DNA from: Macrostomum lignano
Taxonomy: Eukaryota
NCBI GenBank assembly: GCA_002269645.1
Contig: NIVC01000224.1
Coordinates: forward strand, 410,781-474,780
DNA: 64,000 nucleotides
Direction of reading: 5' to 3'
Below, piece by piece: positions 1 through 24,234 of this stretch. Every line of letters begins with the position of its first letter. The stretch's first letter is position 1. The notes beneath the pieces were generated by a model, which saw only the letters and a program-made list of their open reading frames with translations, did no database searches and had not been told where the DNA came from. A program made the translations under genes and the position numbers.

Positions 1-383
1 ATCTTCATTTTTTTTCTAATACTATATTGGCCCCATATTAAATTACCATCGATCCATCATTTGCTTGCTATGGTCCAAACTAATAATAACAAAGCGTTTA
101 AATAAACGGTGCAATAATACTTAGTTGATAAAAAACAAGCATATCGACATTGAATTTTTTTATTTAATAACCCTTTTATGTGTAGTTATTTAGTTGCGAT
201 GCTTAGAAAGTTATTTTCGATACATATCGGCTATAATTATGTTCACTCTGCTTATGTCACGAGTCGAAATCCTCTCTTTAACGTAATCCGTTTTCTATTT
301 TCAGCAATCTCAGTTGTCATTATTATATTAAACTGGTTTCTCTTCGTCATAATAATCGGATAAAATAATTGATTGATTGGTCC

Positions 384-5322
<4,939 letters not shown>

Positions 5323-5355
5323 TGGAGTGAAAAGAAAGGCTTTACGTTAATTGTT

Positions 5356-5687
5356 GTCACGTGACTCTTTTTTCGGCAAATAGGCGATGCAAAAGTGTCT
5401 ATTGGACATGACCATTGTCACGTGACTGTTCTATCAGCCAGTAAACAATGCAAGCAGACTATTGGGCAAAACGATTGTCACGTGACTATTCTCTCGGCTA
5501 ATAGCCAATAGACTATTGTCACGTGACTGTTCTATCAGCCAATAAACAATGCAAGCAGACTATTGGGCGAAACGATCGTCACGTGACTATTCTCTCGGCT
5601 AATAGCCAATAGACTATTGTCACGTGACTGTTCTATCAGCCAATAAACGATGCAGACAGTCTATTAACGAGACGATTGTCACGTGAC
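5356..5687. repeat. Tandem array of 7 GTCACGTGAC palindromes with intervening CCAAT-like motifs
   Basis: GTCACGTGAC runs from 5356 to 5678, spaced about 42-60 bp apart, with a higher-order period of about 100 bp. Confidence 0.85.
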
Positions 5688-6831
5688 TGCTTTCCCAGCC
5701 AATAAGCGACTTTCATTAGTGTGTGTTGCCAATAGAGAGCAACCGGGTGAAAAAAGCACGGTTGAGTCCATTTTACTCAGTAAACACAACTTTAAAGGAT
5801 ACTTAGCAATCGCCCTTTATATCCTCGACGTCTGTATCGATCATGTTACTTTGTTGCGATTTATTATTTATATCCACACAAAACTTATATTGTTTTCTGC
5901 CCATGTTAGTTACCTGTTCAACGGTGGAAAACAAACGAAAAAAAATCATATCAGCTCGCGTTGCAGTTTTCTCTGATGCAGTCGAACATTTTAGAATATT
6001 TTATCATTATATTTCGATTTTACATTTGTTTTATTTCTATTATCTAGGTGCATTCCAATTGAGAATTGATTTATAATCTAGTCATTAGGCATATCAAGCT
6101 TGTATTTTTGAAAGTCTTTTACTGAATTTTTTTAACGAAAACTTCTGTAAATATATTCGTACTTGACCGTTACTGAGACCTTCTTTCTTGCGAGTATATT
6201 GTGTTAATTATACATTTTTGTACTGTTGTAAGACACAGCTGTTCAAACTTTGCGTACTGTTTTCTCAACTTTTTTATTGTGTCATCTAGTGTTTGCTTTT
6301 GTTTTTCGTTTGTGTATTGTTTAATTGTTTAATTCAATTGTTTTCCTTTGTTTTAATTACTCAAGCAGCTTCTCTTTCTGTACGAGAGTCTACATGCAAG
6401 TGCAACGCATTAATGCAATTTTCATTGAACTTTTGCACTGCAGTGTAACCAGAAAGACACCTTTTTTGTCGTTGACGTCCAAGTCAATTTGTTTTACGTG
6501 TTTTTAAAAATTATTTTATATTTATTTCTCTTGTCGTCTAAAATTTAAATATTTGCCACGTATAAAGTACAAACGGAATACTGTTTTGTGTTTGTATTTG
6601 TTTTATTATTGGTGCTTGTTAAAGAAGATTTTGTTGTTTAAATTCTCTGAATATTGATTGTTTTCTGCGAACTATTTAGCAAATTAATTTTCGCGCATCT
6701 GTTTATTCAAATTTAAAAAAATTAAATTATGTGTACTTTTATTAACTTCTTGATTGTAAAACGCGGAAACAAATGCAACTCAGAGTCAGTGTTTAGAGGC
6801 ATTTGTAATTTCTACTCATAATGCCTAATTG

Positions 6832-7474
6832 ACCAGTCAGTCAGTCAGTCGGTCAGTCAGCCAGCCAGCCAGTCAGTCAGTCAGTCAGTCAGTCAGTCAG
6901 TCAGTCAGTCAGTCAGCCAGCCAGTCAGTCAGTCAGTCAGTCAGTCAGTCAGTCAGCCAGCCAGTCAGTCAGTCAGTCAGCCAGTCAGTCGGTCAGTCAG
7001 TCAGTCAGTCAGTCAGTCAGTCAGCCAGTCAGTCGGTCAGTCAGTCAGTCAGTCAGTCAGCCAGCCAGTCAGTCAGTCAGTCAGTCAGTCAGTCAGTCAG
7101 TCAGTCAGTCAGTCAGTCAGTCAGTCGGTCAGTCAGTCAGTCAGTTAGTCAGTGAGTCAGTCAGTGAGTCAGCCAGTCAGTCAGTCAGTCAGCCAGCCAG
7201 TCAGTCAGCCAGTCAGTCAGTCAGTCAGCCAGTCAGTCAGTCAATCAGTCAGTTAGTCAGTCAATCAGTCAGTTAGTCAGTCAATCAGTCAGTTAGTCAG
7301 TCAGTCAGCCAGTCAGTCAGTCAGTCAGTCAGTCAGTCAGTCAGTCAGTCAGTCAGTCAGTCAGCCAGCCAGTCAGTCAGTCAGTCAGCCAGTCAGTCAG
7401 TCAGTCAGTCAGCCAGTCAGTCAGTCAGTCAGTCAGTCAGTCAGTCAGTCAGTCAGTCAGTTAGCCAGTCAGTC
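6832..7474. repeat. (CAGT)n microsatellite
   Basis: Direct reading. Confidence 0.97.
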
Positions 7475-8307
7475 AAATTTTCTGGTACAGTAAAATATTT
7501 TAAAGGTTTCCAAGTTACCAAAGTTTTAAAAAACCATGTAAGCCTGTTAATTAGATACCAGAATTCTATTATCTCAAAGTTTCCCAAATCCTACAATTCT
7601 GAAATCCCTAAGCTTCCCATATCCCCAAATTTTGAAATCTCTAATTCCTCAAAACTATTTTGATTTCTGAACTTTAAACTTTCATTTGGCTAGCATAAAA
7701 TACTCAATTATACTACTCAATACGAATCTCAATCTAAATACAAGATACTACAAGTTGCATTGCATCTAATGCCAGTATTGCCATCTGTTTTAATGGCGTT
7801 TGTGCTATCCTCAAACCCTATACAGTCAAGGTTAAGCAGTGTTTTACTCAATGAGCTGCTATCATTTTGTAATAACAGTTATTATTTTAATAATGCTAAC
7901 TAAAATACACGTGAAAAAACCATGCTTTTTAGTGTTGTTTTTTTAAATTCATTGTTTAAATTATTTCTCACTGATAAACCAATTAAGTTAACATAATTAA
8001 ACCATAATTAACATTAAAACTCCAGTCAGTACTCCTGGTTCGTAATGTTTATTTAGCACAATGCTGCGGTTTTGACCCTGTTATTTGACCCTGCAATTGT
8101 GCTTGAGTTAAATGTACATTTCGTTTTCGAAAATCGTAATACCCTGAATAGACGTGACCAAATCGATATGCTCTGGGTTTTTATGCATTAGAATCACAAT
8201 GCAATGTGCCATCGTGCGTCGCATTATCTCGAAACTGAATTTTAGCTTGATTATTTTTTATTTTTTTACAGTATAGCTTGGCAAGCATTTATTCTAATTG
8301 CAGACAA

Positions 8308-9828
8308 ATGGCGGAGCCGACCACTTCCTGCTTTATCAAAGGCTGCACCGATCCTGTGTCTGGCACCGGTGCTCGAATCCGTCAGCCACTGTGTGTAAGA
8401 CATCTTGAACAGGACAGGCACAGGGTGCGTGAGCTGCACAGGAATTTACAGACCAAACTGAAGCCATTGCTGGAATTGCAGAAAGAATTCAGGATGCAGC
8501 AGCAAGCTCTGTCAGTTGAGCTGCAAGAGACTGAGGAGCTGTTTGAGTCGGCTGTGGACTCGCTGATGAAGTGGAAGGCAGCTGTGACAAAGCGACTGAC
8601 TGAGAGACACGACAGCGTGTTGCAGAATCTGCAGCAGTTGTCCGCTCTGCAGGAGTATGAGCGAGAAGTGACGGAAGCAGAAGAGCACAATGACTTCAAT
8701 AAGATGTTTGAAATTTCTAACGCGTTAGATATAAAGAGTGAAGAGTTGCAGATGACGTGCGACACGACTATTACCGAAGACTCTGAGCGAGGCACTGGAA
8801 GGACTGTGGGCGATGTGAGCGGCTGTGTGAGAGACTTGCAGCTGCTGATTGACAGACACCTGAGTGATGTGATGCAGCTGTGCGAGTCAGCAGAGCCTCT
8901 TACTGCACAAAAGCCAATCTGTGAGTTTCAGTCTGAAATAAAAGATCTGCCGGGTTCTCCTTTCTATGTAACATCATGCAGCAACACGCAAGGCTTTTAC
9001 GTGGACTCTCAGAGCAAGGTGGTCAAGGAGGTCACTGACAGAGAGCTCCCACAGCCGTGTCTCTTCGTTAGTTTTCATCCTGAGAATAAGATGAACTACC
9101 TTCTTGCCTGTTCAGTAGACGGCAAAGTAAAGGCAAAAGTTCCTCTCGAAATTGACACCTCAGAACCTGTTGCTGGACTCTGCTCTGACAGCAAGCGACA
9201 GACTATTTATGTTGCGGAGTTTGATGCAGTGAAAGTGACGGACCTGAGCGGCTGCGTGACGCAGGTTTTCAACTCGAGCAGCCTGGGACAGCCAGTCGAC
9301 TTTATTGCTTTGGCCTGCAGCTCTGACAAGATATTTGCTTTGAGCGATGTCAACCCAGAATGGTCAGTGCTGTGCATCGATAAAGACAGCGGTCAGCTGC
9401 AGGCCAACATTACCTTAGTTGGTGTCAGTCTCTCTGGTAAATTCACTGAGGGCATGTCTGTAATCGACAACTCGCTGCTGCTCACTGACTATGAAGGTGG
9501 GAAGCTCTACAAAGTGTGCATCGCCAGCGGTCAGCTGATCTCGACCTACCCGACCAAGCGAAGCCGTTTTAAAAAGTTTTCTGGACCGGTTGGTGTCGCG
9601 GCTCATCGCTCAGGTCTGCTGTGTGTCAGCGAGTATGCAGAGCATGCGGTTACTTTGATGCGGAGTGACGGCACTGTGCTGCAGACTATCGAACTCGAGG
9701 GTCAAGCTGGCAGTGACGGTGACGAACTTGATGACCCATTTGGCTTGGCGATCGTTGAAGGAAGCCCGAAGCTGCTGGCGGTGTGTCAAGATTCAAAATC
9801 GATTGGCCTTTATAAGCTTACTGTGTAA
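8308..9828 (+). CDS. Zn-knuckle + coiled-coil + NHL-like beta-propeller protein, copy A (TRIM-NHL-like architecture, no RING)
   Basis: Intronless 506-codon ORF from ATG 8308, preceded by acceptor TTGCAG. N-terminal C-x4-C-x15-C-x2-H, a Q/E/L-rich coiled coil, and C-terminal NHL-like blades ([23 protein letters not shown]; [11 protein letters not shown]). Confidence 0.8.
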
Positions 9829-12570
9829 TTTTAAAGTTTATTCGCATCTCTACGGTTTCAAATCTTATTTGACGTCTATGTTAATTGTTGTTTTGTCCAC
9901 CCTCAATGCCGTTTTTGGCAGGTCATGAGCATTCGCATACTTTTATAGTAACAGTTACTAGTCTACTGTTATGAGTGGTCATTTTGTTTTAGCTTGATCA
10001 TAGACGCAAATATTTTCATTAATAGAGCCGTTTAAGTATACCAATGATAAATTTTTCGCAGATTTAATCAATTTCTTTTCAACGTAACTACAAAGAAAAA
10101 TCCTTATCCATCGACTAAGTTTTATTTTAACTTACTAAAATACTTTGAATTGAATGCTTTCGTAACCCTGTGTTGTAGATACGTACGGGCTATTGTCTGC
10201 AATTACATATATGCTTGTCTTTCTTTCAAATGTAATCGATTTTTTATTTGTGAAAGCGAGGCTTTGGATCCATTTTTAGCTAATTACTTTTCGGATTTCG
10301 GATTAGAAGCCTATGAGTTTGATTTTTGGAAATTTTAAATTTTTGAGTCAGTATAACAAAATCTATCATAATAATCGATACAGCATGTCTGATATTAAGA
10401 GATAAAATTTCTCAACTCTCGGAAATTGAACTCATACACACGAGTAAATACAAATGCCAAAAATATTCTATTAATTGCCAACTTTTCGACTTTTCTATTT
10501 TTCTGATCCCCCGCGTGTTGCCATACATGCGGCTATATATGGCTTTTTTTATGTCTTTCCGCATTAATTGTTTTTCTTTTAAGTTTGATTCACCCTTTTT
10601 TAATTAAAATGTCTTTTGACAAGAAATATACAAACAATTGACTGATTTGCCGATAAAGTTATGCAATGTCTTAATGTGCTTTTTTCAGTTTCTGTGTTTG
10701 GAATCCATTAGGTAGGTTTAAAGGTAACTAAGATTGGCGTGAAGTATTTCACATTATTTAAGAATGTCTGGGACTTTTATAATAAGGTTGTTCCAGTCGG
10801 CTGTTTAAGTGCCTGCTGCTAGACAGTTTTTGCTTCCTTGACCGAAATTTCTTCCTGGGTACCAACTTAAACTTCAATTTTAATAGAACAGTCCTACCTG
10901 TTGCTAAGGCTATGTCCACTTGCCATTACTTTTGAATAACTGGACGAATTACGAATTGTGACTACGAAACTTCGTCCTAATTGTCCTTTCAACATGAAGG
11001 AGAGTGTGACTCATGAGATTTTCTTGTGTCAGCTGTTATCTGACAGCTATCCTATCAGAAGTTAACAATGCTTGGACGAAATGGCTGTTGTTTGTTCCAA
11101 ATAGCAATGCCTCGATTTGCTCCTAACAGTTCAGACTTGGCTTAAGCTTTTTTCACCAAGTAACTAATATTAGTTTGGCAGCAGTGAAGATCAACCCCAC
11201 ATTGCTTGCATCTACTTTTGCTGCTCATATCAAGACTTGCGACCTGGTGCTAAAAAAAACAGAAGGCAATGGCAAAGATGCAGTCAGAGCTGGACGAACA
11301 GCGCCAGGTTGTGGCAGAGCGCGAGAAGGCGAATATGACACAACAGCAGAAGGCAGCACACTCTTGTGCAAGCTGACATTAGTGCCCTGCTAAAAGATGC
11401 CAGCCGTTATGGTGTTCCCAATTCTGCAAAGAAGCTGCAGAAAAAACTTGAATGACTATGCTTCCCTGAATTTCACTCTGTCACAAGCTGTCTCCAAACC
11501 TTTCCGATTGTAAAATTCCCATGTTTAAAGTGTCAAAAATCCTTAAGCCAGCCTATTGCAGCGCCCCTGAAGTGACACATTTTGGCCCTAAAAGTTCTCA
11601 TCCAGATTGAATGTTTTTTAACCAATGAATGCGCTCCAACTAGCAAAAGCTGAGGACACGACCCCAACCAATGAAAAGTAGCTATGGATCACCCAATGCG
11701 ATCAAGACTGAAAAGTACTATAAAAGCCCATGTCAACCAAGCAAGAAGCTCGCCTTTTTTTGCCCCTCTCTTTTTCCCTCTCCCCTCTTTTAGCTTTTGT
11801 TAGCTACCTAAGAATTACCTTTGATTGAAACAGTTAGGGTCTCAACCCGAATACCAAAACTGATAAATTAATCTATTGAAACCAAACTAACAATCAACCC
11901 ACACTCCACAACAGACTGAACCTTCGGTTCACCCCAAACAACAAGAACCCATTGTAGCTTGAACCGAACGAGCTTCTTATTTGGAATTCCATCTTAGACA
12001 TTCTATTTTGTAAGATAACATCTCAAGATTGTGACCATCAAATACAACGGTCAAGTGTTTGCATTATCAGGAAAAGTCAGTTGAATCCGCCGCCTCAGTT
12101 ATTTGGCTCTCACAATGAAACCTGAAGTAGACATAGAGCCATAGGGATGAGAGACCAGACGAGCAACACCATATTTAAAATATTTCCCCCCATCATCAGA
12201 AATGGGCTCATAGGAGCAATCTAATCTATTTATTCATCCTTGATGCAGACAGCGTACAAAATGAAGAGCTAGGCAAAGCTTTGTCCTAAACACACCAGTG
12301 CTATAGATACAATTATCGATGCCATTAATACCATAGTCCCGTGCAAATTTAAATTCCTATTCATCTGGATCTGACCGCAAAATTGAAGTTTCCGTTTTTA
12401 AGCAAGTTATATGGTTTCAAAAGTAACTTTAAAGTTGTGAATTACGTCATTTGGTCCCTCTCGCATCATATCAACTTAAATATGGCATTTTTGGCTTTGT
12501 TAAAAGTTTTTCAGTATTTTCACAGGAAAAGTATTTTTCATTATTTTAAAGTATTTTCAGTTCCAACTCA

Positions 12571-14091
12571 ATGTCGGAGCCGACCACTTCCTGCTTTATC
12601 AAAGGCTGCACCGATCCTGTGTCTGGCACCGGTGCTCGAATACGTCAGCCACTGTGTGAAAGACATCTCGAACAGGACAGGCACAGGGTGCGTGAGTTGC
12701 ACAAGAATTTACATACAAAGATGAAGCCCTTGCTGAAATTGCAAACCATATTTCGGATGCAGCAGCAAGCTCTGTCAGTTGAGCTGCAAGAGACTGAGGA
12801 GCTGTTTGAGTCGGCTGTGGACTCGCTGATGAAGTGGAAGGCAGCTGTGACAAAGCGACTGACTGAGAGACACGACAGCGTGTTGCAGAATCTGCAGCAG
12901 TTGTCCGCTCTGCAGGAGTATGAGCGAGAAGTGACGGAAGCAGAAAAGCACAATGACTTCAATAAGATGTTTGAAATTTCTAACGCGTTAGATATAAAGA
13001 GTGAAGAGTTGCAGACGACGTGTGGCACGGCGTCTAACGAAGACTCTGAACGAGGCACTGTAAGGACTGTGGGCGATGTGAGCGGCTGTGTGAGGGACTT
13101 GCAGCTGCTGATTGACAGACACCTGAGTGATGTGATGCAGCTGTGCGAGTCAGCAGAGCCTCTTACTGCACAAAAGCCAATCTGTGAGTTTCAGTCTGAA
13201 ATAAAAGATCTGCCGGGCTCCCCTCTCCATGTGTCATCAGGCAGCAACACGCAAGGCTTTTACGTGGACTCTCAGAGAAAGGTGGTCAAGGAGGTCACTG
13301 ACAGAGAGCTCCCACAGCCGTGTCTCTTCATTAGTTTTTGTCCTAATCATAAGATAAACCACCTTCTTGCCTGCTCAGTCGACGGCTTAGTGAAAGCGCA
13401 GCTACAGCTCGACATTGATGTCTCAAAAACTGTTGTAGGACTCTGCTGTGACAGCAAGCGACAGAGTCTTTATGTCGCCCAGTTTGATGTAGTGAAAGTG
13501 ACGGACCTGAGCGGCTGCGTGACGCAGGTTTTGAACTCTAGCAGCCTGGGACAGCCAGTCAACTTTTTTGCCTTGACCTGCAGCTCTGACAAGATATTTG
13601 CTTTGAGCAAAGGCAACCCAGAATGGTCAGTGCTGTGCATCGATAAAGACAGCGGTCAGCTGCAGACTAAAATTTCCTTGATTGGAGCCAGTCCCTCTGG
13701 TAAATATGTCGAGGGCATGTCTGTAATCGACAATACGCTGCTGCTTGCTGACTATGCCGGTGGCAAGCTCTACAAAGTGTGCATCGCCAGCGGTCAGCTG
13801 ATTACGACCTACCCGACCAAGCGAAGTCCTCTGGAGAAGTTTCGTGGAACTGTTGGTGTCGCGGTTCATCCGTCGGGTCTGCTGTTTGTCAGCGAGCGTT
13901 CAGGGCATGTGGTTCGTTTGATGCGGAGTGACGGCACTGTGCTGCAGACTGTCGCAGTGGAGGGTCAGACTGGCATTTGCGGAAGAAAACTTGATAACCC
14001 ATTGGGCTTGACGATCATTGAAGGAAGCCCCAAGCTGCTGGCGGTGTGTCAGAATTTAAAATCAATTGGTCTTTATACTTTTACTGTGTAA
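12571..14091 (+). CDS. Zn-knuckle + coiled-coil + NHL-like beta-propeller protein, copy B
   Basis: 506-aa ORF colinear with copy A. Acceptor TTTTCAG lies 10 nt upstream of the ATG. Confidence 0.8.
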
Positions 14092-14897
14092 TTTTTAAGT
14101 TCATCGGGATAAATTTGCGCTTGTGAAGGCTGTTTGACGTGGTGTTAGTTATTTTTTTTCACATTTAATGTTTTCTTTTTACACTTCATTAGTAGTCTAA
14201 TGCTGTATTAGTAGTAATTTGAGTAGTCAGCAGTTATTTTTCGGTTCATCCGGCACGCAATTATTTGAAAAGCTATTTTTAATTTATATACTGATTTTAC
14301 TGCGAGTGGAAATCAATTTTTGTTTACTTACTTTATGTGTTGTGACTAAAATTTATAGTGACTGATTAACACTGATTACCTGATGCATATTTTTCTTCTG
14401 TTCAATTTTTCACTCTTAGCAACAAGGCTGTGATTCCTTTTTAGCAAATTACTTTTTATTCAAATTCGAAGGCTGAGTTGGACCTTCTCGAAATTTTAAT
14501 TTTTTAATAGTAAGTATAACAAAATTTATCATAATAATCTAAATATAGCATTCCGTTATAGGGCTGGAGGAATTATTCGAAATTAGGAAATTTATTTTAA
14601 ACATTAATACTAGTAGGGCAATCAAAAATTTTAATAAATTGCCAACTTTCTGGCTTTTTTCTTCAGATACATCAGTGGTGCCACATTTTATGCTATTTGT
14701 TGTTTTCTGCGCTGAAATTTCTTCTATATTTGATCGTCTATTGTTGCTAAAAAGTCTTTCGACAAGAAATATACGAACTATTGAAAATTTGCTAATTTCC
14801 TGATAAGGTTATCAAATGTCTTAAGCTGTTATTTTAGTTTCTGTGTTTGGAATCCATTAGTTAGGTTCAAATGTAACTAGGATTATATTTATATATA

Positions 14898-15590
14898 GAC
14901 ATTGATAACTCCAAAACTGTTGTAGGACTTTGCTGTGAGAGCAAGCGACAGAGTCTTCATGTTGCTCAGTTTGATACAGTGAAAGTGACGGATCTGAGCG
15001 GCTGCGTGATTTAGGTTTTTGACTCAAAGAACCTCAAACAGCCAGTCGACTTCAGTGGCTTGGCCTGCAGCTCTGACAAGATATTTTCTTTGAGTTTAGG
15101 CAGCCCAGAATGGTCAGTGCTGTGCATCGATAAAGACAGCGGTCAGCTGCAGACCAAAATTACCTTAGTTGATGTCTGTCCGTCCGGTAAATTCATCGAG
15201 GGCATGTCTGTAATTGACAACGCGCTGCTGCTCACAGACTATGCTAATGGCAAGCTCTACAAAGTGTGCATCGCCAGCAGTCAGCTGATATTGACCTACC
15301 CGACCAAGCGAGGTCGGGTAGGTCGTGTTGCTGTCGCGGCTCATCGCTCGGGTCTGCTGTTTGTCAGTGAGTGTTTAGGGCATGTAGTTCGTGTGATGCG
15401 GAGTGACGGCACTGTGCTGCAGACTGTCGAAGTCGACTGTCAGGCTGGCAGTGACGGTGACACACTTGACGACCCGTTTGGCCTGACGATTATTGAAGGA
15501 AACCCCAAGCTGCTGGCTGTCACTCAGAGTAGCATGTCTTTCTGCATTTATAGACTGAATATGTGTGACTCTCTTGCGAAATCCTACTAA
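14898..15590 (+). pseudogene. 5'-truncated propeller-only copy C of the same family
   Basis: Homology begins abruptly at [18 protein letters not shown] (14898). An in-frame TAG at 15012-15014 replaces the Gln codon of the other copies. The C-terminus diverges (..[17 protein letters not shown]). Confidence 0.8.
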
Positions 15591-16783
15591 CTATTTAGTC
15601 TTTTTGTTGTCGTAACTAGTCTTGTTTCGCTCGCCTGTTTGGCTTTGCTGTTATTGATTCTGTTTCATCATTTTAAGTTTTTTATAGTTGGTTCTTACGA
15701 GTAAGCTTTTCGTTTAGTTCGTTTCCAATATGATGCAGCATTTTTGCACCAGCTATTATCGCTTTTGGGAAGTTTCGAATGTGATTTCAGACTAACAACG
15801 GGAGACTCGCGTCACCAGTGTGTACATGCATAAATATGTGCTTTATATAATACGCGTAGCTCGTAAAGTTTAAAAATGCAACTGACGAAAATATTTAAGG
15901 TCACTTGCAACCAATTTGAGTGAGCAAACAATTCTTTAGACAGATTTATCACTGCTAATAATGAGCTAACCGTATTATTTAAGTTTAACTTGATCGAGAC
16001 AGTTCTTGCCAATTGGCAAACCAGCATTGCATGATGAGCATAGAGAGTCTTAGATTGATTTTCCCGAAGTTTAATTTAGATTAGATATTTGATGAAGTGT
16101 TTTTGACAGTGTTTGTTTTTGTTTTGTTTTTGAAGTGTTATTGACTTGTAAAAACTTTATCCTACTAGCCCACGGTAGTAAAATTTATTTTTGCTGATGC
16201 ATATTTTCGATAGTCACAAATTGCTGTCTGGCGTTCATCCTCTTATTATCCAGCTTTTTTAGGTTCCCGAAGTCTCTTATCCCTTCACTGATACTAGAAT
16301 AAGTCAACATGCCACTCGCAATTAAACTTGTGAAATAGTAGAGCGTCTACGCCGTCTACTCTTCATTCAGTAGTTTTTCTGCGCAGTGTCACTTAAATTT
16401 ATTGTGGCAGCTAAAATTTTCTCCTTTCCCTGGGTTGGTGGTTTTCGTAAGGTTAAGAATGAACAACAGGCATTTAACTCGATGTACGCAAGTGAACGCA
16501 AGAAGAACGAAAATCAGTCTATAAGACAGGCCCAATCTGTTATCGGCCTGGCTGTGGGCTTGAACGCCACCTCTTTCTCTCTTGCTCGCTATGCACGCAT
16601 TGGATTCGGGTTTGATTTTAAAAAGACGATGGCAATTGTTGCAGATTCGAAAGCTTTAAATATTTTGTAAAATTCAATGATTATGTATCAGATTAAACAT
16701 GCCTCAGGCCCTCGTGATTTATACAAATAACTCCCGAAAAAGGCATGTGTAATCTCGTATAAACCATAGACATTAAGACTTTG

Positions 16784-18093
16784 TTGTTAAACGAGGGTGG
16801 GAAGCTTAGCTACCCGCGGATCAGCCCGGGGTGGGCTCTGCCGCTGGGGGGCACTACCAGGGGCCAAGGCATTAGCTGTCCAGGGCCCGAGATACCCCTT
16901 GGATACATTGGGATTGGACCCAGCTTAAAGCTAGGGAAAGGGCGAGTTGACCCAAGCCTACGGTACAAGACACCGCCAACCCAAACAGTGGAATCAGGGA
17001 CGGTGCTAGGACCGAGTCCACCCAGGCCACCCCCCCAGCTAGCGAGTCCTCGGGAGTGCGCAGAAAAATTGGAGAGCGAAATGCTACTAAGGAAGCGGTC
17101 CGAGTGAGGAGTTACTCCTAAACCTACGGAAATGGCTTAAACTATTGGAGCGAGTCTGGGCAGCTAATTACCACGAGCGATCCTATACAGGGGGTTCAGG
17201 AGCCCTGAAGGTCTCGAGCCTCAAGGCTTTTCACTACCCAGCTCTATTTTGGAGTGAGTCTGGAAGGCTTGTATCCGAGGGGGAGACTCCAGGCGGGAAG
17301 ACCGTCCACCTCTATTGCTACCAGCCCAAGGGCATCGCCTATCCAGCTCATTATTGGGGGCCAGGCCAAGGGGTCGGGAGAAGAGGCACCCAGGGCAAGA
17401 GGACTCCGGACTCAGCCGTTTGTCCCCGGTTCGGGACGAACATCCTTCCCAGGACACCAATCCACTGTCAGGATGAGAGCCAGAGACACGCAAGCAGGGA
17501 CCTTTCAGCAGGAGCCAGGAGATGGACCCGAGGACAGGGCAAGATGGACCGGGCAGGGGCAGAGCTCAAAACTCCGTAGGTTGGAAGGCTTCAAGTGGCC
17601 AGATAAAAGAATAAAATAATAAAAGCCACAAAGGCACAAAGCTAGGGATAAAACAGCGCTGGGATGCCAGCCCAGAAAAAAAGAATGGCAGAAGGGAGGA
17701 GCACCATAGCCCTAAAGCAGGCAGCTTGCCGACCTGCAGCCCGGGTGCACAGCCTCAGGGCTGGCATGCTACTGGGTCTACCGTACACCTTTGTGAATTG
17801 GTCATTCTTTCCTGCAGGGCGGGTACGACCGGGGGGCTCAGTCCCGTCCTAGCCACACTGCAGTCCAGAGAACCTACTCACTCCAGGCACCACCCCCCCC
17901 CCTAAACCAAGGCCGAGGGCCGAAATTCTATTGGTTAGAAAAAAAGAATAGGGTTTAGTATTTGTAATGGGCACAGCCCCTCCGGGGCGGACCCTTAGAA
18001 ATTGGCATAGCCAATCGGATTGCGCACAACCCTTAGACAAGCTGCCAGAGAGACAGCCAGGGTAAAAACAGTCAGAGACCGAGGGATTTATGA
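16784..18093. mobile_element. Unclassified 1.3-kb GC-rich insertion flanked by 59-bp perfect direct repeats
   Basis: AAATAACTCCCGAAAAAGGCATGTGTAATCTCGTATAAACCATAGACATTAAGACTTTG occurs at 16725-16783 and 18094-18152. The interior is much more GC-rich than the flanks and shows no recognisable protein domain. Confidence 0.6.
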
Positions 18094-18752
18094 AAATAAC
18101 TCCCGAAAAAGGCATGTGTAATCTCGTATAAACCATAGACATTAAGACTTTGCGGGATATTATTGAATATTACCAAATAAAATCCCGGAAAACGCAAATA
18201 TTGTCACGGAAAGTCTTTATTTCTATGGATTATATACATTACTATCATAAAGGCAAAATACGCAAATGTAACTACTAAAAAGAAGTACGAGTAAATAGGT
18301 GTTTTTTCCTGAATAACACATCTTGCTTTTTTTAGTATCTGTAAGCCCACCGCATATTTATTTATCTGTTATTTGTTTTAGTGTCAAGACAAAACTTAGT
18401 CCCCAAGGGTAGAAAACTCTAGATCTCTGTTTAAAGCACCCAGTGCCATGGATAGGAGGATTGAGACCAATAATACCAAAGTACCATGCAAGTTTAAATC
18501 CCTAGTGATACTTGGTTTTGAATCTAGAATTAAAATTCTGGCTATCGAAGTTGGATGCTTTAAATATAAGTTTATAAACTTGTTATTTACCCTCTCATTA
18601 AGTCACTCTCGCATTGCCCTTTTATGGTGATTAACCTAGAGTTGGCAGATTTCAGAAGTAATTATTCATACAAGTTAGCTTTGCGTCAAGAAATGGTTTT
18701 CTGATTTCTGTATTAAATTTTACTATAATATCTTTTTTTCAGTTACAACTCA

Positions 18753-20267
18753 ATGTCCGAACCGAGCACTTCTTGTTTTATTAAATGCTGCAACGATCCC
18801 GCATGTGGCACTGGTATTCGAATCCCACAGCCATTGTGTGAGAAACACATTATGCAGGACATAGAAATTGTGCGAGTACTATGCAAAAATATGCAGAAGA
18901 AGCTGAAGCCATGGCTAAAACTGCAAAAAGAATTTCGGATGCAGCAGCAAGCTCTGTCAGTTGAGCTGCAAGAGACTGAGGAGCTGTTTGAGTCGGCTGT
19001 GGACTCGCTGATGAAGTGGAAGGCAGCTGTGACAAAGCGACTGACTGAGAGACACGACAGCGTGTTGCAGAATCTGCAGCAGTTGTCCGCTCTGCAGGAG
19101 TATGAGCGAGAAGTGACGGACGCAGAAACGCACAATGACTTCAATAAAATGTTTGAAATTTCTGGCGCATTCGATATTGAAAGTGAAGAGTTACAGGTGG
19201 TATTTGGCACGACTATTACCGAAGACTCTGAGCGAGGCACTGGAAGGACTGTGGGCGATGTGAGCGGCTGTGTGAGGGACTTGCAGCTGCTGATTGACAG
19301 ACACCTGAGTGATGTGATGCAGCTGTGCGAGTCAGCAGAGCCTCTTACTGCACAAAAGCCAATCTGTGAGTTTCAGTCTGAAATAAAAGATCTGCCGGGT
19401 TCCCCTCTCCATGTGTCATCAGGCAGCAACACGCAAGGCTTTTACGTGGACTCTCAGAGAAAGGTGGTCAAGGAGGTCACTGACAGAGAGCTCCCACAGC
19501 CGTGTCTCTTCATTAGTTTTTGTCCTAATCATAAGATAAACCACCTTCTTGCCTGCTCAGTCGACGGCTTAGTGAAAGCGCAGCTACAGCTCGACATTGA
19601 TGTCTCAAAAACTGTTGTAGGACTCTGCTGTGACAGCAAGCGACAGAGTCTTTATGTCGCCCAGTTTGATGTAGTGAAAGTGACGGACCTGAGCGGCTGC
19701 GTGACGCAGGTTTTGAACTCTAGCAGCCTGGGACAGCCAGTTGACCTTATTGCTTTGTCCTGCAGCTCTGACAAGATATTTGCTTTGAGCAAAGGCAATC
19801 CAGAATGGTCAGTGCTGTGCATCGATAAAGACAGCGGTCAGCTGCAGACCAACATTACCTTAGTTGGTGTCTGTCCGTCCGCTAAATCCATCGAGGGAAT
19901 GTCATTAATTGACAACGCGCTGCTGCTCACAGACTATGCTAATATTTACAAAGTGTGCATCGCCAGCGGTCAGCTGATCTCGACTTACCCGACCAAGCGA
20001 AGTCGCCTTGAAAAGTTTCGTAAATGTGCTGGTGTCGCGGCTCATCGGTCGGGTCTGCTGTTTGTCAGCGAGTATTCAGGGCAAGTGCTTCGTTTGATGC
20101 GGAGTGACGGCACTGTGCTGCAGACTGTCGATGTCGAGTCTCAGACTGGCAGTGGCAGGAGAAATGTTGATAGCCCGTTTGGCTTGGCGATCATTGAAGG
20201 GTGCCCGAAGGTGCTGGCGGTGTGTCAATATTCAAAATCCATTGGCCTGTATAAGTTTACTGTGTGA
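18753..20267 (+). CDS. Zn-knuckle + coiled-coil + NHL-like beta-propeller protein, copy D
   Basis: 504-aa ORF with an in-frame 6-nt deletion at DYAN-IYKV. The upstream TTTTCAG TTACAACTCA ATG context matches copy B. Confidence 0.8.
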
Positions 20268-20761: not shown

Positions 20762-21360
20762 GGCCCCAAGCCTTCCAAATCCCCCAAGCTTCCCAAATCC
20801 CTTATGCTTCCCAAATCCCCAAGCTTCCCAAATCCCCCATGCTTCCCAAATCCCCCAAGCTTCCCAAATCCCCCAAGCTTTCCAAATCTACCCAGGTTCC
20901 CGAATTTCCCAAGCTTCCCAAATCCCCCAAGCTTTCCAAATCTATCCAGGTTCCCGAATTTCCCAAGCTTCCCAAATCCCCCATGCTTCCCAAATCCCCC
21001 AAGCTTCCCAAATCCCCAAGCTTCCCAAATCCCCCATGCTTCCCAAATCCCCCAAGCTTTTCAAATCTCCCAAGCTTCCCAAATCCCTCAAGCTTTCCAA
21101 ATCCCCTAGCTTCCAAAATCCCCCAAACTTCCCAAATTCCCAAGCTTCCTAAATTCCCAAGCTTCCTAAATTCCTAAGCTTTCCAAATCTACCCAGGTTC
21201 CCAAATCCCCCAAGCTTCTCATATCTCCCAAGTTTCCCAAATCCCCCAAGCTTCCCAAATCCCCCAAGCTTCTCAAATCCCCCCGCTTCCCAAATCCCCC
21301 AAGCTTCTCAAACCCCTAAGTTTCAGAAATACCCAAGCTTTTCAAATCCCCCAAACTTCA
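20762..21360. repeat. 18-bp minisatellite
   Basis: Unit CCCAAGCTTCCCAAATCC, degenerate. Confidence 0.92.
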
Positions 21361-21436
21361 AAAATCTTTTAAACTCTAAGCCGTTTTTTAATTGTGTCTT
21401 ACTGACTCTCAGTTCTGTGTAAATATTGCAGTTATT

Positions 21437-24234
21437 ATGAAACAAAATATGGTCTCCGCTATCAAGTCTGGCCAGAGTCCCAACGCGGACACATTCGATG
21501 ACCTGCCACTAAACGATACACTGAAACGCTCCATCCGTAACCATGGTTTTATCGAACTGTCTACAATTCAAAATCAAGCTTTCCCTTTGTACTTGAATGG
21601 GGAAAATGTGTTTGTTCAGTCACCGTCTGGCACTGGCAAGATGTCTATGGCCGCAATTTCAGTTCTGCAATCAGTGAAACTCCCAAGTTTGAGCTCTACA
21701 AATCCTGACAATCCTGTTCTGAGTCGTACTGCTCAAGCTTTGGTGCTGACTCCGACTAGGGAGATGGCTCTGTCAGCGAGCTGCATGTTTAATGACCTGG
21801 GAAAATCAATGGGCGTATTGTGTTGCGCCTGCGTTGGAGGTATTAAGGTTTGTGATTTGGCGTATCGAATAGTTCTATTGGCGTTGTCTATTAATTATGC
21901 CATAATTATTTATTAATCGTTCGATCCCATTTCCCCAGCCGCGGGATCAGAAGACTGAGCTAGATGCAGGCGTGGACATTGCGATCGGCACCCCAGGCCG
22001 AGTTGAAGACTTAATCAATCGAGGATGGTTGAGCACTGCTCAGATACGATTGATAATCCTCACTGAGACCGACGATTTGATTAGACGAGGTTTCAAAAAC
22101 AATCTGATTAACATAACTAGTCAGATGCCTGAAGGTTTGCAGGTAGGCTGTGCTGTGCTTTGTTTAAACCTTAAAACAATATATTCCATTTTTTTTAGTA
22201 AAGAGTCGCCGACCAAACTCATTAAAGAATCGCCGTCAAAAACCAAGAAAGAATCGCCCTCAAAAGCCAAGAAAGAATCGCCCTCAAAAGCCAAGAAAGA
22301 ATCGCCCTCAAAAGCCAAGAAAGAATCGCCGTCAAAAGCCAAGAAAGAATCGCCCTCAAAAGCCAAGAAAGAATCGCCGTCAAAAGCCAAGAAAGAATCG
22401 CCGTCAAAAGCCAAGAAAGAATCGCCGTCAAAAGCCAAGAAAGAATCGCCCTCAAAAGCCAAGAAAGAATCGCCCTCAAAAGCCAAGAAAGAATCGCCCT
22501 CAAAAGCCAAGAAAGAATCGCCCTCAAAAGCCAAGAAAGAATCGCCCTCAAAAACCAAGAAAGAATCGCCCTCAAAAGCCAAGAAAGAATCGCCGTCAAA
22601 AGCCAAGAAAGAATCGCCCTCAAAAGCCAAGAAAGAATCGCCCTCAAAAGCCAAGAAAGAATCGCCCTCAAAAGCCAAGAAAGAATCGCCCTCAAAAGCC
22701 AAGAAAGAATCGCCGTCAAAAGCCAAGAAAGAATCGCCGTCAAAAGCCAAGAAAGAATCGCCCTCAAAAACCAAGAAAGAATCGCCCTCAAAAGCCAAGA
22801 AAGAATCGCCCTCAAAAACCAAGAAAGAATCGCCCTCAAAAGCCAAGAAAGAATCGCCCTCAAAAGCCAAGAAAGAATCGCCCTCAAAAGCCAAGAAAGA
22901 ATCGCCCTCAAAAGCCAAGAAAGAATCGCCCTCAAAAGCCAAGAAAGAATCGCCCTCAAAAGCCAAGAAAGAATCGCCCTCAAAAGCCAAGAAAGAATCG
23001 CCCTCAAAAGCCAAGAAAGAATCGCCCTCAAAAGCCAAGAAAGAATCGCCCTCAAAAGCCAAGAAAGAATCGCCCTCAAAAGCCAAGAAAGAATCGCCGT
23101 CAAAAGCCAAGAAAGAATCGCCCTCAAAAGCCAAGAAAGAATCGCCCTCAAAAGCCAAGAAAGAATCGCCCTCAAAAGCCAAGAAAGAATCGCCCTCAAA
23201 AGCCAAGAAAGAATCGCCCTCAAAAGCCAAGAAAGAATCGCCCTCAAAAGCCAAGAAAGAATCGCCCTCAAAAGCCAAGAAAGAATCGCCGTCAAAAGCC
23301 AAGAAAGAATCGCCGTCAAAAGCCAAGAAAGAATCGCCCTCAAAAACCAAGAAAGAATCGCCCTCAAAAACCAAGAAAGAATCGCCCTCAAAAGCCAAGA
23401 AAGGATCGCCCTCAAAAACCAAGAAAGAATCGCCCTCAAAAGCCAAGAAAGAATCGCCATCAAAAGCCAAGAAAGAATCGCCCTCAAAAGCCAAGAAAGA
23501 ATCGCCCTCAAAAGCCAAGTAAGAATCGCCCTCAAAAGCCAAGAAAGAATCGCCCTCAAAAACCAAGAAAGAATCGCCCTCAAAAGCCAAGAAAGAATCG
23601 CCGTCAAAAGCCAAGAAAGAATCGCCCTCAAAAACCAAGAAAGAATCGCCCTCAAAAGCCAAGAAAGAATCGCCGTCAAAAGCCAAGAAAGAATCGCCCT
23701 CAAAAACCAAGAAAGAATCGCCCTCAAAAGCCAAGAAAGAATCGCCATCAAAAGCCAAGAAAGAATCGCCCTCAAAAGCCAAGAAAGAATCGCCCTCAAA
23801 AGCCAAGTAAGAATCGCCCTCAAAAGCCAAGAAAGAATCGCCCTCAAAAGCCAAGAAAGAATCGCCCTCAAAAGCCAAGAAAGAATCGCCCTCAAAAGCC
23901 AAGAAAGAATCGCCGTCAAAAGCCAAGAAAGAATCGCCCTCTAAAGCCAAGAAAGAATCGCCCTCAAAAGCCAAGTAAGAATCGCCCTCAAAAGCCAAGA
24001 AAGAATCGCCCTCAAAACTCATCAAAAGCCATCAAAGAATCGTCTTTCAACTTCCTGAAAAGTTCATCTAGCACTTTAAAGAAACGCCATGCCGCTGACT
24101 AAAGCTCCGAACCTCCATCATTTCAGGTGCTGATATTCTCGCCTACAGCTCCAGTTGAATTGATGGAATTGTTAAACAGTTTGAACTTGAACCCAAGCCC
24201 AGTGCATGTTCGACCTAATCTGGACCGACCGTAA
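21437..24234 (+). CDS. eIF4A-like DEAD-box protein, N-terminal RecA domain only, degenerate catalytic motifs
   Basis: Exons 21437-21847, 21939-22142 and 24127-24234, all phase 0. Motifs: FDDLPLNDTLKRSI..GF..STIQ (Q motif), SPSGTGKM (I), LTPTREMA (Ia), GG, GTPGRV (Ib), LTETDDLIRRGF (II; DEAD replaced by TETD), QVLIFSPT (III; SAT replaced by SPT), then stop. Confidence 0.8.
22201..24035. repeat. 24-bp minisatellite (about 75 units) in intron 2 of the eIF4A-like gene
   Basis: Unit AAGAAAGAATCGCCCTCAAAAGCC, bracketed by donor GTAGGC at 22143 and acceptor TTTCAG at 24121-24126. Confidence 0.97.

What the first reader, a model, noticed from the sequence alone, without database searches (positions are those of the whole stretch)
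8308..20267. Tandem array of RING-less Zn-knuckle/coiled-coil/beta-propeller genes diversified by patchwork exchange
Seen: the copies are mosaics. A and B share the N-terminal ~45 aa ([25 protein letters not shown]) while D differs. The coiled-coil core ([20 protein letters not shown]) is essentially identical in A, B and D. At [12 protein letters not shown] matches A rather than B. B 13219-13559 and D 19401-19741 are identical over about 340 nt while A diverges. D then resembles truncated copy C ([16 protein letters not shown]). Variation clusters in short inter-strand segments of the propeller (e.g. [23 protein letters not shown]; [27 protein letters not shown]). Established: NHL propellers bind RNA or protein on their top face, and expanded TRIM-like families are often immune or restriction factors. 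Inference: a lineage-specific recognition receptor family with a homogenised oligomerisation stalk and variable ligand surfaces, shuffled by gene conversion; pseudogene C could be a donor.
Basis: partly seen in the sequence, partly recalled or inferred. Interest (0 to 1): 0.7.

Follow-up and report, generated by a model that had tools for sequence, protein, structure and literature searches.

The report
Mosaic flatworm coiled-coil/NHL-propeller gene array
A flatworm (Macrostomum lignano) tandem array of intronless genes for an undescribed RING-less, TRIM-NHL-like protein keeps swapping pieces between copies, so the coiled-coil stalk stays identical while the loops on one propeller face differ; what the proteins bind is unknown.

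Summary
Three intact copies lie on the + strand: A 8308-9828, B 12571-14091 and D 18753-20267. C (14889-15590) is a 5'-truncated pseudogene. The copies are mosaics. B and D share an exact 341-nt block, and all three are identical over gene positions 185-368. Site patterns cluster far beyond chance (p<1e-4), and a PHI test over ten paralogues gives p<0.0005.

The window is Macrostomum lignano. Two syntenic contigs of assembly Mlig_3_7 differ from it by about 1% in the spacers but by 7-13% in patches inside the genes. They carry at least 7 and 8 copies instead of 4. D carries variants otherwise found only in the C pseudogene lineage. The array therefore evolves by unequal crossing-over plus ongoing interlocus gene conversion, with a pseudogene as one donor.

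The protein has a conserved C-x4-C-x15-C-x2-H knuckle, a roughly 100-residue helix and an NHL-type propeller (best Foldseek matches TRIM3, TRIM2, Thin and TRIM71). No RING or B-box was detected.

Synonymous divergence is about ten times lower in the coiled-coil core. Amino-acid change concentrates in the predicted top-face loops (omega 0.80, against 0.19 in bottom loops). Positive selection is not shown, and an immune role is untested. The family is undescribed in the papers I could search, and nearly all identified members are from this species.

The parts
8308..9828 (+). Copy A, intact, 506 aa. A hybrid: the 3' ~590 nt are nearly identical to positional counterpart A2, while the 5' ~1 kb is 7-13% diverged from it. 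Has the acidic top-loop set (net charge -6).
12571..14091 (+). Copy B, intact, 506 aa. 94% identical to annotated P0001 (BOX15_Mlig000357g3).
14889..15590 (+). Copy C, a pseudogene. 5'-truncated at codon ~278, with an internal stop, a 4-codon deletion and a lost natural stop. It is a pseudogene in all three haplotypes (C1, C2). Its lineage donated a tract to D.
18753..20267 (+). Copy D, intact, 504 aa (2-codon deletion in a b-c loop). The most mosaic copy: its own 5' end, a B-type middle, then a C-type patch.
8302..8303 (+). AG of a polypyrimidine/AG splice acceptor 4 nt before the ATG of A. The equivalent AGs lie at 12559-12560 (B) and 18741-18742 (D). Proposed spliced-leader trans-splice sites (inferred).
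   Evidence: trans-splicing and multi-gene transcription units in this species: PMC5730564; TU naming
12592..12666 (+). C-x4-C-x15-C-x2-H zinc knuckle (codons 8-32 of B). The same codons are 8329-8403 in A and 18774-18848 in D.
   Evidence: C8, C13, C29, H32 invariant and retained across distant paralogues
12755..12938 (+). Homogenised coiled-coil core, gene positions 185-368. Identical in A (8492-8675), B and D (18937-19120), and 0-5 mismatches per 90-120-nt window to all other paralogues.
13219..13559 (+). Exact 341-nt B=D tract (D 19401-19741). The wider tract is B 13051-13559 = D 19233-19741 with 2 mismatches.
19862..19942 (+). C-type patch in D (gene positions ~1110-1190, approximate bounds). 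It carries C-lineage-specific variants that D1 and D2 lack. The corresponding C segment is roughly 15167-15247.
13183..14088 (+). NHL-type beta-propeller of B (codons 205-506). Variable d-a loops at codons 371-382, 415-429 and 463-476; variable b-c loops at 395-398 and 443-446.
6834..7475 (.). (CAGT)n microsatellite, about 160 copies, upstream of the array.
20764..21359 (.). 18-nt minisatellite, about 34 copies, downstream of the array.

Best explanation
The region is one haplotype of a Macrostomum lignano tandem array of intronless genes. The genes encode an undescribed protein family found so far almost only in this species.

The protein has three parts: an N-terminal CCCH zinc knuckle (half-RING or half-B-box-like), a long coiled coil, and a C-terminal NHL-type beta-propeller. 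This is a RING-less and B-box-less relative of the TRIM-NHL architecture.

Shown: the array evolves by two recombination processes.
(1) Unequal crossing-over between copies changes copy number and makes hybrid genes. The window has 4 copies; syntenic contigs have at least 7 and 8.
(2) Frequent short-tract gene conversion between copies has continued since the haplotypes diverged by about 1%. It includes transfer from the C-type pseudogene lineage into D.

Shown: the outcome differs by region. Two helical segments (codons ~61-123 and ~166-204) are kept nearly identical at the nucleotide level in all close paralogues. Amino-acid differences, including acidic-versus-basic loop versions, concentrate in the d-a and b-c loops of the propeller.

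Inferred: the conserved helices form a TRIM-like dimerisation stalk. Because they are identical, paralogues may also pair with one another. The variable loops form the ligand-binding top face of the propeller, so the copies are adaptors with different protein or RNA specificities. Conversion reshuffles loop versions among them. The long identical blocks also serve as homology anchors that sustain further exchange.

Inferred: the genes are transcribed in multi-gene units and resolved by spliced-leader trans-splicing at the AG just before each ATG.

The ligand and the biological role (immune, germline or other) are unknown.
For: Identity and synteny:
- The 9 word-search homologues and 18 of the 20 looked-up relative clusters are M. 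lignano; the other two clusters are short environmental contigs.
- Two Mlig_3_7 contigs are collinear with the window.

Recombination:
- PHI p<0.0005 and many significant shared tracts. The window-only pattern test gives p<1e-4.
- The nearest neighbour changes along each gene.
- Window versus L002 divergence is about 1% in spacers but 7-13.5% in A's 5' 1 kb and in B positions 409-1008.
- The other haplotype has a different tract: D2 is near-identical to B2 over about 813-1239.
- D shares C-lineage-only variants at 1120, 1125, 1128, 1179, 1188-1190 and 1280, which D1 and D2 lack.

Copy number:
- The window's upstream flank matches the flank of U1, four copies upstream of A2.
- A1 has U3's upstream sequence, and Z1 has U2's.

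Protein:
- Invariant C8/C13/C29/H32.
- AF2 helix 30-126 and propeller 205-504.
- Foldseek top hits are NHL domains, with target-normalised TM up to 0.79. phmmer against the Thin NHL gives E 7e-7.

Regional pattern:
- dS 0.037 in the coiled-coil core against 0.25-0.44 elsewhere.
- Top loops dN 0.235, omega 0.80; bottom loops dN 0.041, omega 0.19; strands omega 0.41.
- Top-loop net charge ranges from -6 to +3.

Transcription:
- A polypyrimidine/AG acceptor sits 4-10 nt before every ATG.
- The annotation is transcript-based and distinguishes transcription units from the genes inside them (PMC5730564).
- Mlig001567.g1 is the trans-spliced upstream PDCD2 gene, and g3 is an array copy.
Against: - No functional, expression or binding data exist for any family member.
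- Omega of the top loops has a CI that includes 1. Long surface loops are variable in most propellers, so adaptive diversification is not demonstrated.
- The loop classes rest on a medium-confidence AF2 model (mean pLDDT 68.5; propeller mostly 65-89 per 10-residue block, with one dip to 54) and on the textbook blade topology. They were not derived from coordinates.
- The blade count (6 or 7) is unresolved.
- Neither coiled-coil dimerisation nor zinc binding has been tested.
- Several counterparts in the other contigs carry stops or frameshifts (A2, A1, D1, Z1). Constraint on individual copies is therefore weak, or some of these are long-read errors.
- The pairwise dN/dS values pool non-independent pairs of recombining sequences.
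- Trans-splicing at these particular sites is inferred from sequence and gene naming. No reads were examined.
Confidence: 0.7

Rival explanations
1. Neutral birth-and-death with concerted evolution. The array is young and recombines freely. The loops vary only because they are weakly constrained, and the identical blocks merely reflect where conversion happens to be efficient. There is no diversified recognition function, and some or most copies are drifting towards pseudogenes.
For: - Top-loop omega is 0.80 with a CI of 0.56-1.23, compatible with neutrality.
- C is a pseudogene in all haplotypes. A2, A1, D1 and Z1 carry stops or frameshifts.
- Copy number varies between haplotypes.
Against: - Whole-gene omega is 0.2-0.5, and three of the four window copies are intact over 504-506 codons.
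- Bottom loops and strands are clearly constrained (omega 0.19 and 0.41).
- The architecture is retained across paralogue clusters only 15-27% identical in the N-terminal half.
- The charge-swapped loop versions recur across copies instead of looking like random decay.
Confidence: 0.25
2. The nucleotide-level identity of the coiled-coil core is caused by an overlapping functional element rather than by conversion and selection on the protein. Candidates are the antisense ORF, a small-RNA target or an RNA structure.
For: - Synonymous sites are almost invariant in codons 61-123.
- A 137-165-aa antisense ORF overlaps this region in A, B and D.
Against: - The antisense ORF is low-complexity, has no Pfam match and extends well beyond the invariant block into variable sequence.
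- There is no Rfam match in the window.
- Conversion tracts are demonstrably frequent here, and a second homogenised block (codons ~166-204) behaves the same way.
- More distant paralogues differ substantially in this segment at the protein level.
Confidence: 0.08
3. The identical blocks and mosaics are assembly artefacts: collapse or chimeric consensus among near-identical tandem paralogues in a polyploid genome.
For: - M. lignano is a hidden polyploid that is hard to assemble, and Mlig_3_7 is redundant (PMC5730564).
- No reads could be examined here.
Against: - Copies are separated by about 0.8-3.2 kb of spacer that is only ~70% similar in patches between repeat units.
- Independent Mlig_3_7 contigs reproduce the gene order and most of the sequence at about 99% in the spacers.
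- Those contigs have their own, differently placed tracts (B2/D2).
- The C-type patch in D is similar to C, not identical.
- The reading frames stay intact.
Confidence: 0.05

Closest known systems
RING-less TRIM-NHL proteins (Drosophila Brat and Wech/Dappled; class VII TRIM-NHL such as TRIM2, TRIM3, TRIM32/Thin, TRIM71/LIN-41)
   Same: - Order of parts: zinc module, long coiled coil, C-terminal NHL propeller.
- NHL domains of TRIM3, TRIM2, Thin and TRIM71 are the best structural and sequence matches.
- Sources auto-name some family members TRIM2 or TRIM2/3/71-like.
- From my own knowledge: Brat and Wech lack the RING, and NHL top faces bind RNA or protein.
   Different: - There is no RING and no recognisable B-box, only a single C-x2-4-C-x15-C-x2-H knuckle.
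- The N-terminal half has no detectable sequence relation to any solved TRIM.
- The Pfam NHL score is below threshold.
- The genes are intronless, tandemly expanded and nearly all from M. lignano, whereas canonical TRIM-NHLs are conserved single-copy developmental regulators.
- The propeller charge is not uniformly basic.
Expanded, rapidly evolving TRIM clusters (primate TRIM5/TRIM22, fish finTRIM)
   Same: Tandem paralogues with a conserved coiled-coil scaffold and variation concentrated in the surface loops of the C-terminal recognition domain. This comparison is from my own knowledge.
   Different: - Those families use a B30.2/SPRY domain and retain the RING and B-box.
- Positive selection and antiviral function are demonstrated for them. 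Neither is shown here.
Sea-urchin SpTransformer (Sp185/333) gene clusters
   Same: Clustered small genes flanked by short tandem repeats that share sequence blocks as mosaics and show local genomic instability (PMC10887614, abstract seen). Here the array lies between a (CAGT)n microsatellite and an 18-nt minisatellite.
   Different: The protein is unrelated. SpTransformer immune induction is documented, and no such evidence exists here.
Pseudogene-templated gene conversion systems (chicken Ig V genes, trypanosome VSG)
   Same: A pseudogene lineage (C) contributed a tract to an intact gene (D).
   Different: Here the event is germline and evolutionary, not a programmed somatic or clonal process. 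Only one such tract was documented.

Membership tests
TRIM / RBCC (tripartite motif) family | N-terminal RING finger | tested here: not met
   There is no Pfam RING hit in A, B, D or ten distant relatives. Only 7 residues precede the first Cys. A splice acceptor sits 4-10 nt before each ATG. None of the ORFs of at least 80 aa in the spacers looks like a RING, and the two of them that were scanned against Pfam had no hit. UniProt's 'RING-type' names for some members coincide with the half-RING-like C-x2-C-x15-C-x2-H knuckle; the link to a PROSITE profile is my inference.
TRIM / RBCC (tripartite motif) family | B-box zinc finger (8 ligands, 2 Zn) | tested here: not met
   There is no Pfam zf-B_box hit. 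Only four conserved ligands are present: C8, C13, C29 and H32. One distant member is auto-named 'B box-type domain-containing' by UniProt, so a degenerate remnant cannot be excluded.
TRIM / RBCC (tripartite motif) family | Long coiled coil directly after the zinc module, forming an antiparallel dimer | tested here: inconclusive
   AF2 predicts a continuous helix at 30-126 plus helices up to residue 192. The oligomeric state was not modelled, and a profile search of the PDB found no TRIM coiled coil.
NHL-repeat beta-propeller | Sequence match to the NHL repeat model above the curated threshold | tested here: not met
   Pfam NHL scores 16.2 bits in A and 19.8 bits in P0025, against a cut-off of 20. 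phmmer against the PDB does hit NHL domains: Thin E 7e-7, TRIM71 2e-4, TRIM2 1e-3.
NHL-repeat beta-propeller | Six-bladed propeller fold superposable on solved NHL domains | tested here: met
   The top Foldseek matches are NHL domains of TRIM3, TRIM2, Thin and TRIM71, with probability 1.00 and target-normalised TM 0.70-0.79. WD40 matches score lower, at 0.5-0.6. Caveat: the strand count is compatible with 6 or 7 blades.
Multigene family evolving by interlocus gene conversion and unequal crossing-over | Statistically supported mosaic tracts between paralogues | tested here: met
   PHI p<0.0005, with GENECONV-like tracts. The window-only test gives p<1e-4.
Multigene family evolving by interlocus gene conversion and unequal crossing-over | Events younger than haplotype divergence, and copy-number differences between haplotypes | tested here: met
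   Spacers are about 1% diverged, against 7-13% patches inside genes. D carries C-only variants that D1 and D2 lack. Copy number is 4 against at least 7 and 8.
Immune or restriction receptor families under diversifying selection | omega > 1 at ligand-contact sites | tested here: inconclusive
   Top-loop omega is 0.80 with a bootstrap CI of 0.56-1.23. Recombination invalidates tree-based site models.
Immune or restriction receptor families under diversifying selection | Induction by infection, or a demonstrated pathogen ligand | not testable with these tools
   No expression data could be linked to these genes. Their ids are absent from the supplements that could be searched, one of which is stored truncated.

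The most novel reading that the evidence does not exclude
The array encodes a combinatorial recognition system. The coiled-coil core is kept nucleotide-identical, so any two paralogues could form antiparallel heterodimers. Each dimer would present two different NHL top faces. Germline gene conversion, including from pseudogene donors, reshuffles a limited set of loop cassettes such as the acidic and basic 463-476 versions. If so, this would be an NHL-based, RING-less innate receptor repertoire, possibly for antiviral, anti-transposon or gamete/self recognition in a hermaphroditic flatworm.
Probability: 0.12. Interest if true: 0.8.

Novelty: new variant of a known kind. Interest (0 to 1): 0.5.

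Why it matters
The family is a large set of 'hypothetical proteins', and nearly all identified members come from one laboratory flatworm. Its 50%-identity clusters number at least about 20 full-length ones, and many sit in tandem arrays. The family shows that the TRIM-NHL scaffold can lose its E3 ligase module and expand as a tandem repertoire.

The locus is a clean natural example of region-specific concerted evolution. The stalk is homogenised while the binding loops vary, and a pseudogene served as donor. The direction of exchange is documented by comparing three haplotypes or homeologues.

It also has practical consequences. Annotated models in Mlig_3_7 (P0002, P0004, P0006) are chimeras spliced across neighbouring copies. 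Short-read expression or RNAi experiments will cross-react between copies.

The biological significance stays open until a ligand or phenotype is found.

Tried and rejected
- Pfam scans of A-D and ten distant relatives for RING, B-box or any N-terminal domain found nothing significant.
- A profile of the N-terminal 200 residues against all PDB sequences returned only weak generic helical hits (designed bundle, NLRP1 CARD at E about 0.004). I treat these as noise.
- Rfam on the whole window gave no hit, so there is no known RNA element behind the invariant block.
- The antisense ORF and the spacer ORFs at 16781-17579 have no Pfam match.
- Literature searches for Macrostomum plus NHL, for the gene ids, and for TRIM-NHL plus gene conversion returned nothing.
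- Supplements of PMC5730564 and PMC5816591 do not list the family's ids. Only the upstream PDCD2 gene of the same transcription unit appears, and one file is stored truncated.
- A transposon-borne gene was considered. I rejected it because the spacers are collinear between haplotypes and no terminal repeats bound the gene units. The only haplotype-specific insertion (16688-18227) lies between C and D, not around a gene.
- Simple hybrid origin of A as U1 5' plus A2 3' was rejected. A's 5' kb matches neither and is itself a patchwork, B-like at positions 361-480.
- The second structure job and the remaining homology searches were not used, because only secondary structure, not coordinates, is returned.

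Full report
WHAT IS THERE

The region holds four head-to-tail copies of one intronless gene on the + strand:
- A, 8308-9828, 506 aa.
- B, 12571-14091, 506 aa.
- D, 18753-20267, 504 aa.
- C, 14889-15590, a fragment equivalent to codons ~278-506. It has an internal stop, a 4-codon deletion and a lost stop codon.

DNA similarity between copies begins one base before the ATG and ends about 13 nt after the stop. The spacers are only ~70% similar, in patches. The array lies between a (CAGT)~160 microsatellite (6834-7475) and an 18-nt minisatellite (20764-21359).

- A and B are close at the 5' end, and D is different there.
- All three copies are identical from gene position 185 to 368.
- D equals A at [12 protein letters not shown].
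- B 13219-13559 and D 19401-19741 are exactly identical over 341 nt. They differ at only 2 positions over 481-989.
- D is closest to C around positions 1080-1200.

With A, B and D alone, the 243 sites where one copy is the odd one out switch pattern 93 times. Permutation gives 158 +/- 7 (p<1e-4), and there is a run of 45 consecutive B=D sites. A single tree along the gene is rejected.

ORGANISM AND COMPARATIVE MATERIAL

All homologues from the word-based search are Macrostomum lignano 'hypothetical proteins'; the best is 94% identical to B.

Two contigs of assembly Mlig_3_7 (GCA_002269645.1) are collinear with the window:
- NIVC01000989.1 carries U1, U2, U3, a partial U4, A2, B2, C2 and D2, plus a 3' fragment. 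It lies between the same PDCD2-like upstream gene and the same DEAD-box downstream gene.
- NIVC01003604.1 carries Z1, A1, B1, C1, D1, E1 and F1 within the stretch fetched.

M. lignano is a hidden polyploid, and its assembly holds 180 Mb of non-repetitive blocks at least 95% identical to another block (PMC5730564). That accounts for the three versions.

The window's upstream flank matches the flank of U1, while A's 3' half and its downstream spacer match A2. The window therefore lacks four copies that the other haplotype has. The 70 nt upstream of A1 equal those of U3, and those of Z1 equal those of U2. These are further signs of unequal crossing-over.

GENE CONVERSION IS RECENT, FREQUENT AND DIRECTIONAL

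Window versus L002 substitution divergence is 0-1.7% across the A-B spacer. It jumps to 7-13.5% in the first ~1.1 kb of A and to 7% in B positions 409-1008. It falls to 0.3% in the 3' parts of A and of B.

Over ten full-length paralogues the PHI statistic is 0.274 against 0.419 +/- 0.006 (p<0.0005). Fourteen of 45 pairs have a shared tract at the permutation floor.

The other haplotype has its own event. D2 is near-identical to B2 over about 813-1239, so such tracts are not a feature of a single assembly.

Positional counterparts give direction:
- At 1120, 1125, 1128, 1179, 1188-1190 and 1280, D shares its base only with C, C1 and C2, and D1 and D2 do not. A C-type pseudogene was therefore the donor and D the recipient.
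- In 779-900, D carries the B/B1/B2 state, so D was again the recipient.
- In 540-720, B and D share a tract unlike either one's counterparts and closest to A. This implies at least two successive events.

THE PROTEIN

- C8, C13, C29 and H32 are invariant. They persist as C-x2-4-C-x15-C-x2-H in paralogues only 15-27% identical in the N-terminal half.
- AlphaFold2 on a 10-sequence alignment gave mean pLDDT 68.5, with propeller blocks mostly 65-89. It predicts the knuckle, one helix at 30-126, shorter helices up to 192, and a propeller at 205-504.
- The best Foldseek matches in the PDB are the NHL domains of TRIM3, TRIM2, Thin and TRIM71 (probability 1.00, target-normalised TM 0.70-0.79), ahead of WD40 propellers.
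- phmmer also finds the NHL domains of Thin, TRIM71 and TRIM2. Pfam NHL stays just under threshold.
- No RING or B-box is detected. The N-terminal profile finds no TRIM in the PDB.
- UniProt's automatic names for a few distant members ('RING-type', 'B box-type', 'TRIM2') coincide with the half-RING-like knuckle and the NHL domain; that these parts triggered the names is my inference.

A full scan of 1.84 billion representatives found 28 proteins at E<1e-30. About 20 are full-length relatives of 500-550 aa. Eighteen of the 20 clusters looked up are M. lignano, often several per contig. Two are short environmental contigs.

REGIONAL EVOLUTION

Synonymous divergence is 0.037 in codons 61-123 and 0.11 in 166-204, against 0.25-0.44 elsewhere. 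Omega is 0.2-0.5 throughout. The stalk is therefore homogenised at the DNA level and is not merely conserved as protein.

I classed propeller residues 290-504 using the model's strands and the standard blade topology, in which a-b and c-d loops lie on one face and b-c and d-a loops on the other, the 'top' by convention. This convention is from my own knowledge:

| Class | dN | omega | Bootstrap CI |
|---|---|---|---|
| Top loops | 0.235 | 0.80 | 0.56-1.23 |
| Bottom loops | 0.041 | 0.19 | 0.09-0.37 |
| Strands | 0.094 | 0.41 | 0.28-0.61 |

dS is similar across the three classes.

Loop 463-476 exists in an acidic version (GSDGDELDD in A, similar in E1 and C) and in basic versions (GICGRKLDN in [10 protein letters not shown] in D). 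Net top-loop charge runs from -6 to +3, and propeller pI from 4.75 to 8.6.

These results fit a variable binding face. They do not prove positive selection, and they do not point to a conserved basic RNA-binding surface.

EXPRESSION CONTEXT

Every copy has a polypyrimidine tract and an AG 4-10 nt before its ATG. The GenBank models are transcript-derived. The ids have the form transcription-unit.gene. Mlig001567.g1 is the trans-spliced PDCD2 gene upstream, and g3 is an array copy. Mlig005084 has at least six genes. I infer multi-gene transcription resolved by spliced-leader trans-splicing, but no reads were examined.

Models P0002, P0004 and P0006 span 4.6-11 kb and join pieces of neighbouring copies, so they are annotation chimeras.

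INTERPRETATION AND LIMITS

The evolutionary mechanism, unequal crossing-over plus ongoing conversion with a pseudogene donor, is well supported.

The following remain inference:
- that the invariant helices are a dimerisation stalk;
- that identity there allows heterodimers;
- that the variable loops bind ligands.

The immune or restriction idea is untested.

The main rival is neutral birth-and-death with relaxed loops. An assembly artefact and an overlapping nucleic-acid element are less likely (see the rival explanations).

No paper describing the family was found.

Noticed in passing
window 50109-54204 (+): A 70% G+C island encodes a non-LTR (LINE-type) retrotransposon. It has overlapping ORFs for an AP-endonuclease domain, a reverse transcriptase and RNase H.
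   Followed up: partly
window 16688-18227: A 1.5-kb insertion between C and D is absent from both Mlig_3_7 contigs. It contains a 68-bp direct repeat near its ends (16716-16783 and 18085-18152, 97% identical). It is G+C-richer than its surroundings and has no Pfam match, so it may be a small terminal-repeat element.
   Followed up: partly
window 21392-24025 (+): The gene downstream of the array starts as a DEAD-box helicase (Pfam DEAD, E 2e-12). It runs into a 24-nt tandem repeat of about 75 copies encoding (ESPSKAKK)n. Similar repeat blocks recur at about 26.4-28.0 kb.
   Followed up: no
window 8382-8795, 12645-13058, 18743-19240 (- strand): An antisense ORF of 137-165 aa, Ser/Cys-rich, overlaps the N-terminal and coiled-coil part of A, B and D. 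It has no Pfam match and is probably a by-product of codon composition, but it covers the nucleotide-invariant block.
   Followed up: partly
L003 10001-21182, L004 10001-15302, L001 2327-6970: GenBank gene models P0004, P0002 and P0006 are chimeras spliced across neighbouring array copies. One consequence is the internal duplication in P0002. Expression values assigned to these ids will mix copies.
   Followed up: yes
L002 143-1663 (A2); L001 5831-7351 (A1), 15352-16740 (D1), 2327-3905 (Z1): Positional counterparts of intact window genes carry a stop at codon 60 (A2), a stop at codon 380 (A1), many frameshifts (D1) or a 3' frameshift (Z1). These are either haplotype-specific pseudogenes or long-read indel errors.
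   Followed up: partly
window 1-8300; L004 1-1013: The window's first 8 kb is collinear with the flank upstream of the larger array on NIVC01000989.1. That flank carries a PDCD2_C-domain gene (Mlig001567.g1, trans-spliced) sharing a transcription-unit id with array copies.
   Followed up: partly
P0012, P0021 (JGI/IMG contigs of 1.6-2.1 kb): The only non-M. lignano relatives found are on short environmental metagenome contigs. One cluster member is named TRIM2/3/71-like. They presumably come from other meiofaunal flatworms.
   Followed up: no
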